Positions 9,298 to 58,847 of a DNA stretch of 64,000 nucleotides are shown here, piece by piece. Location of the stretch: contig NW_025963846.1 in the NCBI RefSeq assembly GCF_023055435.1, positions 21,886,001 through 21,950,000 on the forward strand, given 5' to 3'. The position numbers were made by a program, and so were the translations under genes. Under the pieces are notes generated by a model that saw only the letters and a program-made list of their open reading frames with translations, had not been told where the DNA came from and searched no databases. Source of the stretch: Haliotis rufescens (lineage: Eukaryota). Position 1 is the first letter of the stretch. Each line of letters starts with the position of its first letter.

Positions 9298-11615
9298 TTG
9301 AACAACCCACATTTCTCCTTTAACTCCAATGACTGGCAACTGAACAACCCACATTTCTCCTTTCACTCCAATGACTGGCTACTGAACAACCCACATTTCT
9401 CTTTTCACTCCATTGACTGGCTACTGAACAACCCACATTTCCCCTTTCACTCCAATGTCTGGCTACTGAACAACCCACATTTCTCTTTCACTCCAATGAC
9501 TGGCAACTGAACAACCCACATTTCTCCTTTCACTCCAATGACTGGCAACTGAACAACCCACATTTCTCTTTTCACTCCATTGACTGGCTACTGAACAACC
9601 CACATTTCCCCTTTCACTCCAATGTCTGGCTACTGAACAACCCACATTTCTCTTTTCACTCCATTGACTGGCAACTGAACAACCCACATTTCCCCTTTCA
9701 CTCCAATGTCTGGCTACTGAACAACCCACATTTCTCTTTTCACTCCATTGACTGGCTACTGAACAACCCACATTTCTCTTTTCACTCCAATGACTGGCAA
9801 CTGAACAACCCACATTTCTCTTTTCACTCCATTGACTGGCTACTGAACAACCCACATTTCTCTTTTCACTCCATTGACTGGCTACTGAACAACCCACATT
9901 TCTCTTTTCACTCCAATGACTGGCAACTGAACAACCCACATTTCTCTTTTCACTCCAATGACTGGCAACTGAACAACCCACATTTCTCTTTTCACTCCAT
10001 TGACTGGCTACTGAACAACCCACATTTCCCCTTTCACTCCAATGTCTGGCTACTGAACAACCCACATTTCTCTTTTCACTCCATTGACTGGCTACTGAAC
10101 AACCCACATTTCCCCTTTCACTCCAATGTCTGGCTACTGAACAACCCACATTTCTCTTTACACTCCATTGACTGGCAACTGAACAACCCACATTTCCCCT
10201 TTCACTCCAATGTCTGGCTACTGAACAACCCACATTTCTCTTTTCACTCCATTGACTGGCTACTGAACAACCCACATTTCTCTTTTCACTCCAATGACTG
10301 GCAACTGAACAACCCACATTTCTCTTTTCACTCCATTGACTGGCTACTGAACAACCCACATTTCTCTTTTCACTCCATTGACTGGCTACTGAACAACCCA
10401 CATTTCTCTTTTCACTCCAATGACTGGCAACTGAACAACCCACATTTCTCTTTTCACTCCATTGACTGGCTACTGAACAACCCACATTTCTCTTTTCACT
10501 CCATTGACTGGCTACTGAACAACCCACATTTCTCTTTTCACTCCATTGACTGGCTACTGAACAACCCACATTTCTCTTTTCACTCCAATGACTGGCAACT
10601 GAACAACCCACATTTCTCTTTTCACTCCATTGACTGGCTACTGAACAACCCACATTTCTCTTTTCACTCCATTGACTGGCTACTGAACAACCCACATTTC
10701 TCTTTTCACTCCAATGACTGGCAACTGAACAACCCACATTTTTCTTTTCACTCCATTGACTGGCTACTGAACAACCCACATTTCTCTTTTCACTCCATTG
10801 ACTGGCTACTGAACAACCCACATTTCTCTTTTCACTCCATTGACTGGCTACTGAACAACCCACATTTCTCTTTTCACTCCATTGACTGGCTACTGAACAA
10901 CCCACATTTCTCTTTTCATTCCATTGACTGGCTACTGAACAACCCACATTTCTCTTTTCACTCCATTGACTGGCTACTGAACAACCCACATTTCTCCTTT
11001 CACTCCAATGACTGGCAACTGAACAACCCACATTTCTCTTTTCACTCCATTGACTGGCAACTGAACAACCCACATTTCTCTTTTCACTCCAATGACCGGC
11101 AACTGAACAACCCACATTTCTCTTTTCACTCCATTGACTGGCAACTGAACAACCCACATTTCTCTTTCACTCCAATGACTGGCTACTGAACAACCCACAT
11201 TTCTCTTTTCACTCCATTGACTGGCTACTGAACAACCCACATTTCTCTTTCACTCCAATGACTGGGTCCTGAGCAACCCACATTTCTCTTTCACTCCTAT
11301 GACTGGCAACTGAACAACCCACATTTCTCTTTTCACTCCAATGACTGGCTACTGAACAACCCACATTTCTCTTTTCACTCCATTGACTGGCTACTGAACA
11401 ACCCACATTTCTCTTTTCACTCCATTGACTGGCAACTGAACAACCCACATTTCTCTTTTCACTCCAATGACTGGCAACTGAACAACCCACATTTCTCTTT
11501 TCACTCCATTGACTGGCAACTGAACAACCCACATTTCTCTTTCACTCCAATGACTGGCAACTGAACAACCCACATTTCTCTTTCACTCAAATGACTGGCT
11601 ACTGAACAACCCATA
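9298..11615. repeat. 42-bp minisatellite, ~55 copies
   Basis: Unit ctgaacaacccacatttctcttttcactccattgactggcta, with recurring variants and occasional 41-bp units. It is the source of the 564-aa ORF. Confidence 0.98.
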
Positions 11616-23771: not shown

Positions 23772-24106
23772 GTTTGTTTGTTTGTTGTTTAGCGCCACAC
23801 TTAGCAACATTCCAGCCATTTCGAGGCTATTTTTTTTTTGTGCAAAAAAAAGGCAACAAAATGTCCCAATGAGGATTTGCGCCATAAAGATCTTCCATTG
23901 CCACACTCAGCAACATTCCAGCTTTATGATGGTGGTCTGTAAATAATCGAGTCCAGTGATTGATATCATGAGCACTGATCCACACCATTGGGATATGATG
24001 ACATGCTTCAACCAAGTCAGTGAGCCTGACCACCCTATCCTGTGAGTCGCCTATTACTGCAAGCATGGGTTGCTGAAGATCTATTCTACCCCCACATCTT
24101 CACAGG
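23772..24106 (-). mobile_element. Family B retroposon, full length, tail interrupted by an 83-bp insert
   Basis: The reverse complement begins cctgtgaagatg..gggtagaatagatcttcagcaacccatgc and ends in (CAAA)n. The insert is at 23817-23899. Confidence 0.88.
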
Positions 24107-26563
24107 TCTCAAAGTACTGTGAACATTGGTTTTATAACATGTATAATCCAAACCATATGGGAATGATCATTTGAAATTTTCCCAGGCATATTTCATATTT
24201 TTCTGAATTACTCGTCAGATGTTTATGACTAAGATCACTGTGGGCTTTCATTATCTCACACAGTTATTATGAAACTGTGCCTCCGTTAGTGAGTGAGTGA
24301 GATTGGGTTCAACTCCAAAGTGATCCCACAATGGTGCAGCCAGGCCAAGGGTCAAAACAGCAGGGAACTCAACAACATAAAGATTTCCCATCAATCATCT
24401 TATGAAGAACACACAATGCTGAACCTGTCTGCATTACTAAATATCACCTTCAAAGTATCATATCAAAGATTCTAATCAAGAGAACACGGAAGGCCAGTAC
24501 AGACAATAAAGAATACCCACGTAAGTTTTTTTAACGAGTACTTTGTAACTATTCCAAAGAACAAGTGAGGAACTAATATCAATAAATTGCCTCCGACACA
24601 CAGGTCCTGATCAGTGCTATTTAATATTCCTCATCTCCGTGTCTCCGCGGCCGACCTCCTCTTTGTTCTTGTGCACTGAAACGTTCTCTCGTCCTCTTTA
24701 CTGACACAGTCAGGAAAACAAGTAATATTTCTTTATCAACATAACAACACAAGACATATTCTAATTAAATATTCATTTAGAAACAAGCCCCATACATGAA
24801 TCGTTGTATTGAGCCCGTGAGAGTCTCCAACGGCCCCTACCCACTCGATACTGCTAATTGAGGGAAAAGTTTATGCTCAATACCAAGGGGGGCAAGATCT
24901 TAACTATGGAGTTTACGATCACTGATACCAGCGCTACTGTAAATCGGACAACCCTTATAGTTAATCAATTGAAGGAATAATGATTTTCATTGTTAGAAAC
25001 AGTGATTCCAGCAATTATTTCTTTATGTGTTTGTTGTCCGGTATTATAAAGACGGAGGCTGTTAATCCTATACAAAGGATCAATTATTTCCGACTTTCGC
25101 ATGATTTCCGCTATGGACATAATCCTAAAGTAAACATACGCTGTGAAAACTGTGGACGATGAGGTTTCTCTCCTTGTCATTAATACTCACAATCTAAATT
25201 ACAATTAATCAAATTATCGTGATGAACTACCAATCTGACCTTTCATGACCGATTCAAAAGCAGCAATCTGTTGACTCATGAGTCATGGAAAATAAATCGC
25301 TTTTTTCATACCGTAAATCAAATATAATCAAAGTAAACCTTTTGAAAAAGCCAAAATCTGTCTCATGTCCCGTATTTTTCCACATTACGAGGGTTTTATA
25401 TTTTATCCATTAGATCTCTGTGTGTATCTCACAAATCAGGCGGGACTCAAAGTCATGAGTTGAAATAAAAGACGAAATAACGATCATCTCTATCATGTGA
25501 GTCACATGTTTGAATTTATACCCAGGATAACCACCACTATCAAGTCAAAAAGGGAAATAAAATCCCCCACATAACTTCAATGAGAATATTTGAAAAATGC
25601 TGATTCCTAACCCTGACATTAAGTACACCCTTGAAATGTTATTCATATCAATATCACATGTGAACTCTTGCGAATGGGGGTCAGCATGACCTGGAGAGAA
25701 CAAGAACATCACCATGTCATGTACCATTCCGAAACCTATTTCAAACACACGCCGCGTACATGGAGTAAAAAGAAGAAATTGCAATATCTTAAAAATTGAT
25801 TCAAGTACAAACATACACCATGAACAATGAAAAACTTAAATGAGCATTTATGTTCCAAGATCATGGATTTTAAATAAACTGTTATTTTTTTTGTAATTTT
25901 GTCATGATTTCCACCTATTTCAATATAAGTATGCTGTTTATCTCCACTGTTAGCCATACTGTAATAATATACAACGCAACATCAAGACAAGCTTACAAAT
26001 TACTTACAGATGAGGTATCTAATGTTTGGATATTTCAAGTTAACAGAAAACAGCAATTATTGTCATTAAATATTTTACATAAAAACTCAGCATGGAAAAA
26101 TGTCAGTCATGTTGTGTTTGTGGCTCGGCAGGTTGATTATAGTGTAGATCTTGCCAGACAATTAACTTCGGTTTCACCTCGTTAAAATATTTGAGATGAT
26201 CACCTTCTCTGTACCTAATGCCTGAAGTGATGTATCTTTCTTAAAATGTCACTGTGAAAACTTCAAAGTAATAGAGAGCGTCCATAAATTATTGACATCC
26301 ACTTTGATTTGACATAGACAAAAAGCTCATATTGACAGACAAAAACACATCAAATATTTTGTTCTCTGTAAGCTTGACTGCTTTTTGAACACAACAGGGC
26401 CATCTCAAACTTATTTGCATTCTCAACATAGTTTGCATTTCTAAAATCATAATCTTCACTGTTAATCTGATAATAAATAAGTCGCTGATCATACTGACAG
26501 TTATATCTTACCTGACTTACTGGAAATAAAAAATATAATCCCAAAACTGAACACAACACAAAT

Positions 26564-31433: not shown

Positions 31434-31664
31434 TTAACAGCAATGGAGACAAATTGTTCATTTGATTACTATATGAAGTATACTTACAGGTCTGAAAATG
31501 GAGGGCAGTGTTTTTGCAGCCACTAGTCAGCAAGGTTGACAGAGATCTCATTGAAAGAGCAATGAACTCAAGTATGCATAAAAACACTGACCTTTACCAA
31601 CAACTTTATTGCATGCTTAGTTTTAGAAGCTGACATCGGGATTCAAGCTGCACTGTTAGCCCAT

Positions 31665-31941
31665 GGGGGAGGAGTCCCGTGAAGATCCGGGGTAGAGTAG
31701 GTCTTCAGCGACCCATGCTTGCCGTAAAAGGCAACTACGCTTGTCTTCAGAGGCAACTAATGTGATCGGGTGGTCAGACTCACTGACTGGATGCATGTCA
31801 TCGTATCCCAATTGCATGGATCGATGCTCATAATGTCAATCACTGGATTGTCTGGTACAGACTCGATTATTTACCGACCGCCGTCATATAGTTGGAATAT
31901 TGCTGAGTGCGGCATTAATCAACAAAGAAATAAAAAACAAA
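31665..31941 (+). mobile_element. Family B retroposon, full length with 11-bp TSD
   Basis: Structured head (tcccgtgaagatccggggtagagtaggtcttcagcgaccc), body and shared 3' stem-loop. TSD tgttagcccat at 31654-31664 and 31942-31952. Confidence 0.92.
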
Positions 31942-31976
31942 TGTTAGCCCATAGCAAGAGAACATTGTGTGGCCTG

Positions 31977-44186: not shown

Positions 44187-44436
44187 TCTGAAGATCCGGG
44201 GTAGAATAGGTCTTTAGCAACCCATGCTTAGAGGCGACTAACAGGATTGGGTGGTCAGGTTCGCTGACTTGGTTGATGCATGTCATCATATCCCAATTGT
44301 TTTGATCAATGCTCATGATGTCAATCACTGGATTGCCTGGTCCAAAATCAATTATTTACAGACTGCTGTCATATAGCCCCGCTATTGCTCAGAGCGGCGT
44401 TGAACAACGAACAAGCAAGCAAGCAAACAAACAAAC
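44187..44436 (+). mobile_element. Family B retroposon, near full length
   Basis: tgaagatccggggtagaataggtctttagcaacccatgc head, body and (CAAG/CAAA)n tail. Confidence 0.9.
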
Positions 44437-52757: not shown

Positions 52758-53180
52758 TTATCAAGGGCACACTTGAACAAAGAGGCTGTAGCGTTATGAC
52801 TTATCTAAGTCTGTGTTAAATAATAGGAGTTATTCGTGGTGCAGTACAAAAACTTCAAGTGTCAGATCAAAGCTGTATGATGTATTTCAAACTTACAAAT
52901 GAAACCAGTTTGATGGTGGTAGTTTCAATGACTATGACATCATCTAATTAATATAAGAGAAGGAAAGTGCTTTATAGGGCCTTGATCCGCCTATGCTCAG
53001 TTTTTTTAAAAATTTTTTTACAAATGAAGCACAGAGCCAGCATTGTGATAAATATTGGAAATTAAGTATTAAGATGGTTATGGCACAGTTTAAGTTAATA
53101 ATTCATCGAACATGAGAAATGAACATATGAATGGGCACTGGGTACATATATTGAAACTGGGTATTATCGATCCCAGTGAC

Positions 53181-53401
53181 ACCTGTGAAGATCCAGGGTA
53201 AAATAGGTCTTCAGCAACCCAAGCTTGCTGTAAAAGGCGACTTTGCTTGTGGTAAGAGGTGACTAACGGGACTGGGTGGTCAGGCTCGCTGACTTGGTTG
53301 ATGCATGTCATTGTATCCTAGTTACATAGATCGATGCTCATTATGTCAATCACTGGATTGTCTGGTCCAGACTCAATTATTTACAGACCGCCGTCATAGC
53401 T
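53181..53401 (+). mobile_element. Family B retroposon, 3' end lost
   Basis: cctgtgaagatccagggtaaaataggtcttcagcaaccc head with a duplicated hairpin module. The body runs to ccgccgtcatagc. Confidence 0.9.
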
Positions 53402-58341: not shown

Positions 58342-58847
58342 TCCTTGGGGAATCCGGGTTAGAATTGGTCCCCAGCAACCTTTTCTTTTTGTAAGAGGTC
58401 AGACACGTGAAGATCCGGGGTAGAATAGGTATATGTATTTCGCAACCCATGCTTGCCGTAAAATGTGACTATGCTTGTTCTAAGAGACCACTAACGGGAT
58501 CAGGTGGTCAGGCTTTCTGACTTGGTTGATGCATGGGATCGTATCCCAATTGTGTGGATCGATACTCATGATATTGATCACAGGATTGTCTAGTCCAGAC
58601 TTAATTATTTACCAACCACCGTCTTATAGCAGAAATATTGCTGAGTGTGGCATAAACAACAAACAAACAAATGTAAGAAGCTGAGGGTGGTCAGGCTTGC
58701 TGACTTGGTTCATGTATGTCATTGTATCCCAATTGTGTGGATCGATGCTCATGATTTCAATCACTGGATTGTCTGTTCCAGACTCGATTATTTACAGACA
58801 GCTGTCACATTGCTGGAATAGTGTGATGTAAAAGAACAAATAAGAAA
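58342..58847 (+). mobile_element. Nested family B pair: inner copy ~58403-58671 inside an older copy
   Basis: The outer head at 58342-58399 stops at tgtaagagg, a full inner copy follows, and then tgtaagaag and the rest of the outer body resume. Confidence 0.88.

What the first reader, a model, noticed from the sequence alone, without database searches (positions are those of the whole stretch)
31675..31770. Family B retroposon has a pseudoknotted RNA head instead of a tRNA head: candidate self-cleaving ribozyme
Seen: full-length family B copies (24106 minus, 31675, 44187, 53181, 58342, 58404) start at about the same point and show no Pol III A/B boxes. They still have retroposon hallmarks: TSDs, 5' truncations and the shared 3' tail. 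The ~70-nt consensus head folds into four elements: an outer stem CCCGU/ACGGG, a hairpin UGAAGAUC/GGUCUUCA, a loop GGGU(U) that can pair with downstream (A)ACCC as a pseudoknot, and a hairpin UUGYC-GUAARA-GGCRA followed by CUAA and the closing strand. Support for the fold: the copy at 58342 changes GAAG/CUUC to GGGG/CCCC (two compensated pairs), the 24 kb copy turns a U-G pair into U-A, and the last hairpin tolerates GUC/GCC. Established: HDV-like ribozymes end in P4, J4/2 (CUAA/CGAA with the catalytic C) and P2, and they process the 5' ends of several non-LTR retrotransposons (R2, RTE, L1Tc/ingi). Inference: the head is a ribozyme-like or otherwise functional RNA that frees the element from host read-through transcripts. 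Caveat: there is no canonical HDV P1/P3-L3, so it would be a non-standard fold. It may instead be a LINE 5' UTR promoter or translation element.
Basis: partly seen in the sequence, partly recalled or inferred. Interest (0 to 1): 0.85.

Follow-up and report, generated by a model that had tools for sequence, protein, structure and literature searches.

The report
tRNA-less abalone SINE with hairpin head
Family B is a real, very abundant short retroposon of an abalone genome whose first 75 bases are not tRNA-like and contain one hairpin kept by compensating mutations, but nothing I could test shows that this head cuts itself.

Summary
The observation largely holds. Family B is a LINE-dependent short retroposon with thousands of copies. 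It has target-site duplications, 5' truncations and a 3' tail shared with the tRNA-derived family A. Its 5' end is very sharp: the RNA starts at G of GACCYGUG. It has no A/B boxes, no tRNA and no Rfam match.

There are three subfamilies:
- B3: single unit, 93-99% identical to its consensus.
- B1: carries a 22-nt duplication; the 31674 copy belongs here.
- B2: older.

The GAAG/CUUC to GGGG/CCCC change is not a single odd copy. It defines B2, so hairpin 1 is supported by two compensated pairs, which count as one event. Hairpin 2 is kept only through a register shift. The outer stem and the pseudoknot have no covariation and are mostly broken in B2. Folding energy is not unusual.

No ribozyme family fits. 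Rfam found nothing. An HDV-like descriptor did no better than shuffled sequence. A model built from this genome's own twisters did not hit the heads.

The closest published kind is the LP-SINEs of Haliotis (Matetovici 2016). I could not show identity with them.

No RNA reads were available. First readers noted the same head on other pieces of this genome. The ribozyme idea stays open but unsupported.

The parts
31654..31664 (+). Upstream copy of the target-site duplication TGTTAGCCCAT of the 31674 element
   Evidence: The same 11-mer recurs at 31942-31952.
31665..31673 (+). Nine extra G-rich bases (GGGGGAGGA) between the target duplication and the first base of the element
   Evidence: Absent from other copies. 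Origin unknown; it may be untemplated or a 5' extension.
31674..31941 (+). Family B element, subfamily B1 (22-nt duplication), full length
31680..31707 (+). Hairpin 1: UGAAGAUC / 12-nt loop / GGUCUUCA
   Evidence: 95.8% of cells paired in 42 heads. Two pairs switch AU to GC in subfamily B2.
31708..31718 (+). Conserved single-stranded joiner (GCAACCCAUGC in the consensus). Its ACCC is the proposed pseudoknot partner of the hairpin-1 loop
   Evidence: near-invariant. Pseudoknot pair 23:43 is broken in all 16 B2 sequences. RNAalifold instead draws a 4-bp AGCA/UGCU mini-hairpin.
31719..31734 (+). Hairpin 2, first unit (UUGCC-GUAAAA-GGCAA)
   Evidence: 89.5% paired in register 1. B2 fits a shifted 6-bp register instead.
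31739..31760 (+). Duplicated 22-nt unit that defines subfamily B1: second hairpin 2 followed by CUAA
   Evidence: Absent from B3 and B2.
31761..31771 (+). The two alternative 3' partners of the 5' CCCG: ACGGG (decayed to AUGUG in this copy) and CGGGU
   Evidence: 77% against 82% paired. The minimum-energy fold uses CGGGU.
31773..31787 (+). Body hairpin GUCAG-loop-CUGAC, inside the most conserved segment of the family
   Evidence: 91% identity between B2 and B3 consensus in this segment.
31866..31941 (+). 3' tail with the CGCCG...CGGCG stem-loop and an A-rich/AAAC end, shared with family A
31942..31952 (+). Downstream copy of the target-site duplication
23899..24110 (-). Family B copy with a single unit (B3-like), 3' end disrupted
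44189..44422 (+). Family B copy with a decayed 5' end and hairpin 2 deleted
53180..53398 (+). Family B1 copy, truncated at the 3' end
58404..58671 (+). Family B1 copy inserted into an older B2 copy
   Evidence: flanking repeat TGTAAGA.
58342..58403 (+). 5' part of the interrupted B2 copy (GGGG/CCCC hairpin 1). Its remainder is at about 58672-58830

Best explanation
Family B is a LINE-mobilised short retroposon of an abalone genome. Its roughly 75-nt head is not derived from tRNA, 5S, 7SL or snRNA. It is of the LINE-leader type described as 'LP-SINE'.

The most likely working is as follows. The head is an internal, flank-independent 5'-end-defining module: an internal promoter that starts the RNA at G1. 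This step is inferred, not shown. The transcript then folds into two hairpins. Hairpin 1 is shown to be under RNA-level selection. Hairpin 2 is plausible. These hairpins probably serve the stability of the RNA or its use by the partner LINE's proteins.

The 3' stem-loop tail, shared with tRNA-derived family A, recruits the same LINE reverse transcriptase. That follows from established knowledge of stringent-type SINE/LINE pairs.

Self-cleavage is not needed to explain anything seen here and has no positive evidence.
For: - Retroposon hallmarks and copy number.
- One sharp start, unrelated flanks, and target duplications abutting G1 with no extra base in young copies.
- Internal head tandems restart at G1, as if reverse transcriptase reached a physical RNA end there (L052 three times 47 nt, L011 three times about 145 nt).
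- Thousands of copies in three successive subfamilies, the youngest 93-99% identical to its consensus. This fits self-sufficient transcription better than reliance on read-through.
- No tRNA, no A/B boxes, no Rfam family.
- Hairpin 1 has two compensated pairs between subfamilies. The shared one-sided variants inside B3 keep pairing (A12 to G facing U; U13 to C facing G).
- Published precedent: TSD-flanked Haliotis retroposons with about 70-bp LINE-5'UTR-derived heads that share tails with tRNA SINEs (PMC4758252).
- Family B occurs in Haliotis gigantea (probe in PMC13170236).
Against: - No promoter motif was recognised and no transcription data could be obtained.
- Identity with the published Hdi_LP/Hmi_LP heads was not shown, because no sequence is held. 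Their quoted hexamer AATATA reads AATATT here.
- The abundant Nimb-like RNase-H LINE of this genome shows no similarity to the B head in its first 140 nt. Its 3' end is unlike the B tail. No LINE carrying this head was found.
- The lack of an extra 5' G argues weakly against a capped Pol II transcript.
- RNA-level selection on hairpin 1 is not what a pure DNA promoter predicts.
Confidence: 0.5

Rival explanations
1. The head is a self-cleaving ribozyme of a new or strongly diverged class that cuts 5' of G1. It would free the element from host read-through transcripts.
For: - The 5' end is precise and independent of the flank, starts with G and carries no extra bases.
- There is no Pol III promoter.
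- Hairpin 1 is under RNA-level selection.
- Non-LTR elements and their non-autonomous derivatives do use 5' ribozymes: L1Tc/NARTc, R2 SIDEs, Perere-3 twister variants.
- Other agents of this scan report a 58-nt HDV-like ribozyme at the start of this genome's Nimb-like LINE (I did not test this).
- Post-hoc local resemblance to the twister core: CCCAUGC, five bases, then GUAAA, against CCCAAGC-CCGG-GUAAA. In addition the element start lies 1-2 nt before an ACCC/GGGU helix.
Against: - No ribozyme family appears in Rfam at E<=10 on three copies.
- The HDV-like descriptor gives 321 solutions against a mean of 320 in shuffles, and 0 in B2.
- A model of the genome's own twisters gives only chance-level matches elsewhere (E 0.7-9), none aligned to the head as a twister.
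- The outer stem and pseudoknot are not kept in B2 without register shifts.
- The head tolerates a 22-nt duplication and apex indels, and is the least conserved region.
- Position 2 varies (A/U/G) among B1 copies.
- Fold energy is ordinary.
Confidence: 0.17
2. The head is a 5' protein-binding RNA motif, comparable to the 5' pseudoknot region of R2 RNA. The partner LINE's proteins would bind it for second-strand steps or RNP assembly. Transcription would come from elsewhere.
For: - Hairpin 1 shows structure-preserving change with a conserved loop and joiner.
- The tail is already a mimic of a LINE 3' end.
- Published LP-SINE heads are copies of LINE 5' ends.
Against: - No LINE with this head was found.
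- It does not explain how a precise 5' end arises.
- The R2 analogy rests on my own knowledge and was not tested.
Confidence: 0.18
3. The head is a strongly decayed tRNA or other small-RNA-derived Pol III promoter.
For: - All characterised SINE heads are of this kind (text).
- The hairpin-1 loop (GGGUUAGAAUUGG in B2) matches 8 of 11 B-box positions.
- There is no TTTT in the 248-nt consensus.
Against: - ARAGORN and the Rfam tRNA, 5S, 7SL and snRNA models find nothing.
- The B-box-like stretch lacks the critical C56 and lies only about 17 nt from the RNA start, with no A box upstream.
- No B-box match at up to 1 mismatch.
- An 8-bp stem with a 12-nt loop is not a tRNA arm.
Confidence: 0.1

Closest known systems
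LP-SINEs (Lsa_2, Hdi_LP/Hmi_LP, Oco/Oed_LP, Sgl_LP) of Matetovici et al. 2016, PMC4758252
   Same: - Short, TSD-flanked, tRNA-less retroposons, reported in Haliotis among other molluscs.
- A roughly 70-bp head at a fixed 5' end.
- Body or tail shared with tRNA-derived SINEs.
- 3' terminal short tandem repeats.
- Function of the head untested; the authors themselves raise the promoter-plus-ribozyme analogy.
   Different: - Sequence identity could not be checked, because no sequences are held.
- The quoted Haliotis hexamer AATATA reads AATATT here.
- LP heads are homologous to Nimb/RTE LINE 5' ends, whereas the B head has no similarity to the 5' end of this genome's abundant Nimb-like LINE.
Pr77 / L1TcRz of trypanosomatid L1Tc, NARTc and SIDER elements
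   Same: A roughly 77-nt 5' module shared by autonomous and non-autonomous retroposons that defines the RNA 5' end.
   Different: Pr77 folds as an HDV-like ribozyme with proven cleavage and promoter activity. The B head does not satisfy an HDV-like descriptor above chance, and no activity data exist for it.
Twister-variant ribozymes at the 5' end of Perere-3 LINEs (Schistosoma mansoni), PMC8501958
   Same: - A ribozyme that leaves almost all of itself on the 3' product, with target duplications next to the cut site.
- The B head shares short core-like motifs (CCCAUGC, GUAAA, downstream GGG) in the same order.
   Different: - The Rfam twister models and a model built from 8 twister copies of this genome do not match the head.
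- L2 and the T1 partner are missing.
- P2' is displaced by about 10-17 nt.
- The base after the putative cut is G, not the conserved A.
Family A, the tRNA-derived SINE of the same genome
   Same: The same 3' stem-loop tail, hence presumably the same LINE partner; similar size and abundance.
   Different: Family A has canonical A and B boxes (GGTTCGATTCC), while family B has none.

Membership tests
SINE / non-autonomous LINE-dependent retroposon | Short, non-coding, dispersed in many copies, with variable target-site duplications and 5' truncations | tested here: met
   34 of 67 copies with repeats of at least 7 nt; 62 of 153 hits 5'-truncated.
SINE / non-autonomous LINE-dependent retroposon | 3' tail shared with a partner LINE | tested here: inconclusive
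   The tail is shared with SINE family A. The one LINE examined has an unrelated 3' end. The partner was not found.
tRNA-derived SINE (SINE2) | tRNA-like head with A and B boxes | tested here: not met
LP-SINE (LINE-5'UTR-derived head) | Head homologous to the first ~70 nt of a LINE 5' UTR (Nimb-17_LMi, I-3_DR, RTE-9_CPB) | not testable with these tools
   Reference sequences are not held. The only in-genome LINE 5' end recovered, from the Nimb-like RNase-H LINE (L103, L104), is unrelated.
LP-SINE (LINE-5'UTR-derived head) | tRNA-less, TSD-flanked, fixed 5' end, tail shared with tRNA SINEs, present in Haliotis | tested here: met
HDV-like ribozyme | Nested double pseudoknot: P1 starting at the cut site, then P3-L3-P3' directly followed by the P1 3' strand, P1.1, and a J4/2 cytosine before the P2 3' strand | tested here: not met
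   Descriptor scan: B3 gave 321 solutions against a shuffle mean of 320, B1 gave 29 against 93, and B2 gave 0. No solution is shared by the subfamilies. No Rfam HDV, CPEB3 or drz hit. RF01788 found nothing genome-wide.
Twister ribozyme | P2-P4 with conserved L1 UAA, L2 GC, L4 (G)UCCCAAGC, L2' RUAAA and L1' GAGGG, plus pseudoknots T1 and T2 | tested here: not met
   Only partial motifs are present, as judged by eye against the table. No Rfam twister hit on 92 nt at E<=10. Model R1, built from this genome's twisters, gives no head-aligned match.
Hammerhead, hatchet, pistol, hairpin, twister-sister ribozymes | A match to the family covariance model | tested here: not met
Any self-cleaving ribozyme | Site-specific self-cleavage | not testable with these tools
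   This needs a bench assay.

The most novel reading that the evidence does not exclude
The roughly 75-nt head is a new, or twister-related but unrecognisably diverged, self-cleaving RNA that cuts exactly 5' of G1. If so, a whole SINE family of thousands of copies would propagate without any promoter of its own, by excising itself from host transcripts.
Probability: 0.15. Interest if true: 0.85.

Novelty: new member of a known kind. Interest (0 to 1): 0.45.

Why it matters
All SINEs whose transcription has been studied use Pol III promoters taken from small RNAs. tRNA-less SINEs with LINE-type heads were reported once, in 2016, and never tested.

This family offers a tractable case. It has a young subfamily (93-99% identical to its consensus), an exactly defined RNA start, one covariation-supported hairpin, and older subfamilies that serve as natural mutants. 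Finding out whether the head is a promoter, a protein-binding leader or a ribozyme would show how a SINE can live without a tRNA head.

The family also has practical reach. The intronic SNP reported to cause orange muscle in Haliotis gigantea lies in the most conserved segment of a family B copy.

Tried and rejected
1. Rfam at gathering score on the whole window and at E<=10 on three copies gave nothing relevant. The best hit on the head was SAM riboswitch, 10.1 bits, E 9.6, which is chance.
2. The HDV-like descriptor did no better than shuffles. My descriptor is loose, so this only shows lack of support.
3. Twister: the genome holds at least 8 twister-P1-like copies (up to 45 bits). Model R1 built from them does not match B heads.
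4. RF01788 genome-wide gave no match, but only 34 of about 33,000 candidates were scored.
5. A metagenome pattern scan for the head core gave 11 of 12 chance bacterial hits and one cut-off real fragment, L086. So no cross-species set was obtained.
6. LINE hunt:
   - I recovered the 5' end (L103, L104) and the 3' end (L095) of the RNase-H LINE. They are unrelated to the B head and B tail.
   - L094 is a 5'-truncated copy.
   - An apparent head-like stretch on contig C52 is not above chance.
   - Head-bearing loci with odd downstream sequence (L033, L096, L097) are truncated or ordinary B2 copies.
I recomputed the consensus from files instead.
10. A literature string search found no published family B consensus.

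Full report
**What is there**

The window is part of a 1.33-Gb eukaryotic genome. It is very probably an abalone, for two reasons. A 49-nt probe from Haliotis gigantea ITGA8 intron 3, printed in PMC13170236, is plainly a family B copy. Other agents of this scan also call the genome abalone.

BLAST of the 31660-31940 element against the window finds copies that reach the 5' end at 24110(-), 31674, 44189, 53180 and 58404. It also finds several 5'-truncated copies. Genome searches with three head variants gave 4,436, 2,444 and 229 first-look candidates. These are rough lower bounds.

**The 5' end**

In alignments of 34 and 46 copies with their flanks, similarity begins at one point and the upstream DNA is unrelated.

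- A simple search for flanking direct repeats found repeats of at least 7 nt in 34 of 67 full-length copies.
- In the clear cases (10-13 nt), mostly young copies, the repeat directly abuts G of GACC[C/T]GTG with no extra base.
- 91 of 153 hits start within the first 10 nt; the rest are truncated.
- Internal head tandems restart at the same G: L052 has three copies of the first 47 nt, and L011 has three copies of about 145 nt. This looks as if reverse transcriptase reached a physical RNA end there and jumped back.
- The window copy starts at 31674. It is flanked by TGTTAGCCCAT (31654-31664 and 31942-31952). It has nine unexplained extra bases before G1.

**Subfamilies**

There are three.

- B3 has a single hairpin-2 unit and is young. 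Its heads are 93-99% identical to the consensus.
- B1 carries a 22-nt tandem duplication of that unit. The 31674 copy is B1.
- B2 is older. It has GGGG/CCCC in hairpin 1 and several other changes.

The B1 copy at 58404-58671 split it, and the insertion is flanked by TGTAAGA. The rest of the B2 element follows at about 58672-58830.

**Not a tRNA head**

- ARAGORN finds no tRNA in the window.
- A B-box pattern with up to one mismatch hits family A copies but no B head.
- Family A shows a canonical tRNA head and the same 3' stem-loop tail as B.
- Rfam finds nothing at gathering score in the window. It finds no tRNA, 5S, 7SL, snRNA or ribozyme family at E<=10 on a B1, a B3 or a B2 copy, nor when only 92 nt of the youngest head are searched.
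- One caveat applies. That E-value is multiplied by 4,227 families, so very weak single-family resemblance would not be listed.

**The fold**

- Hairpin 1 pairs in 95.8% of cells. Two adjacent pairs are AU in 26/25 sequences and GC in 15/14. This is one inherited event, the split of B2 from B1/B3, not many independent events. A quasi-palindrome correction mechanism could in principle mimic selection.
- Shared one-sided variants inside B3 also keep pairing: A12 to G opposite U, and U13 to C opposite G.
B2 instead fits a shifted six-pair register that B3 does not fit (67% overall).
- The outer stem pairs in 77% of cells. Two of its four pairs fail in 12-15 sequences, mostly B2.
- An alternative closing stem, ACCCG/CGGGU, pairs in 82% of cells and is the one used in the minimum-energy fold.
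- The pseudoknot pairs in 87.5% of cells, but one pair is unpaired in 16 sequences (all B2 rows).
- RNAalifold keeps only the core of hairpin 1, an invariant AGCA/UGCU mini-hairpin and three pairs of hairpin 2 (-9.7 kcal/mol).
- Stability is ordinary: z = -1.40, -0.51, -0.16, -1.05 and -0.07 for various head pieces.
- Between the B2 and B3 consensus sequences the head is the least conserved part: 73% and 81%, against 91% for the following segment and 85% for the body. For that B2 consensus I left out eight nested or truncated rows.

**Ribozyme tests**

- A permissive HDV-like descriptor required P1 from the 5' end, P3-L3-P3' abutting the P1 3' strand, P1.1, P2, and a cytosine before the P2 3' strand. 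It gave 321 solutions on B3 against a mean of 320 in shuffles, 29 against 93 on B1, and none on B2. There is therefore no specific HDV-like fold.
- Reading PMC8501958 I noticed that the head carries twister-like core motifs in the right order: CCCAUGC, five bases, GUAAA, then a downstream GGG. I also noticed that the element starts 1-2 nt before an ACCC/GGGU helix.
- I tested this. The genome holds at least eight twister-P1-like copies of one repeat, scoring up to 45 bits, below Rfam's cut-off of 67. A covariance model built from them (R1), run with filters off on ten loci that carry young and old heads, gave only chance-level matches (E 0.7-9). None aligned the head as a twister. The resemblance is post hoc and remains a lead only.

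**LINE connection**

Matetovici et al. 2016 describe 'LP-SINEs' in Littorina, Haliotis diversicolor/midae, Ostrea and Saccostrea. These are TSD-flanked short retroposons. Their first ~70 bp are homologous to the start of the 5' UTR of Nimb and RTE LINEs, and they share tails with tRNA SINEs. Promoter function is only proposed, and the authors mention the L1Tc promoter/ribozyme as an analogy. No sequences are held, so I could not test identity.

Notes of this scan report two things:
- a Nimb-like RNase-H LINE that begins with a 58-nt HDV-like ribozyme;
- a UTR module shared with a tRNA-less family.

I located that LINE through PF00075 and recovered its 5' end in two independent contexts, L103 and L104. 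It starts (A)GTTGCAGTTTG. The B heads show no similarity to its first 140 nt; scores are at or below the shuffle means. Its 3' end is unlike the B tail. What its 5' UTR does contain is an antisense fragment of the family B 3' part (consensus 163-245, 92% identical), sitting inside a duplicated UTR segment. So the notes either concern another family or another LINE. I did not test the LINE's ribozyme.

**What could not be done**

- The metagenome scan gave no usable relatives from other species.

**Verdict**

One of the four proposed structural elements has real comparative support, one is plausible, and two have none.

The head belongs to no known ribozyme family. Its most likely role is a LINE-leader-type module that defines the 5' end, probably as an internal promoter, and whose RNA hairpins matter for the retroposon's RNA. 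I give the self-cleavage reading about one chance in six. It is cheaply testable with the B3 head.

Noticed in passing
Literature: PMC13170236; the corresponding family B segment in this window is 31757-31795: The 24- and 49-nt probes around SNP rs26532113 (ITGA8 intron 3, Haliotis gigantea, orange muscle) are a family B copy. The G>A change is at the CpG of GGATCGGGTGG, in the family's most conserved segment. The paper reports that the G allele binds ILF2 and never mentions a SINE (0 occurrences).
   Followed up: partly
L103:455-537 and L104 (same region); also L098 and L101: The 5' UTR of the abundant Nimb-like RNase-H LINE contains an antisense 5'-truncated family B fragment (92% to consensus 163-245). 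It is flanked by a roughly 95-nt duplication of the UTR itself.
   Followed up: partly
G000 contigs C2 (11.42-11.46 Mb), C578/C579, C598, C52: The RNase-H LINE occurs in head-to-tail arrays with periods of about 6.36 and 6.82 kb. Contig C52 holds arrays with a period of about 2.9 kb that include the LINE's first 63 nt. The array units are composite (LINE plus other DNA), not clean full-length elements.
   Followed up: partly
L106:347-401(-), L107:346-400(-), L108:101-155(+), L109-L113: There are at least eight copies of a twister-P1-like motif (up to 45 bits, below Rfam's cut-off of 67.2). They lie inside a dispersed repeat whose flanks are conserved for at least 100 nt upstream and at least 300 nt downstream.
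   Followed up: partly
L052:1520-1720(-) and L011:1213-1640: Tandem multiplications of the family B 5' part: three copies of the first 47 nt in L052 and three copies of about 145 nt in L011. Each restarts at the element's first base.
   Followed up: no
window 58342-58830: Nested insertion: a B1 copy (58404-58671) sits inside the hairpin-2 loop region of an older B2 copy, with the duplicated target TGTAAGA.
   Followed up: yes
L026, L027, L028 (G000:C312:1.352-1.357 Mb): Three identical family B1 copies with identical flanks at 2,248-bp spacing, so the SINE lies inside a larger tandem repeat.
   Followed up: no
window 9463-11157 (-): A 564-aa open frame with Galaxin-like repeats (PF24748, E 2.9e-12).
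   Followed up: no
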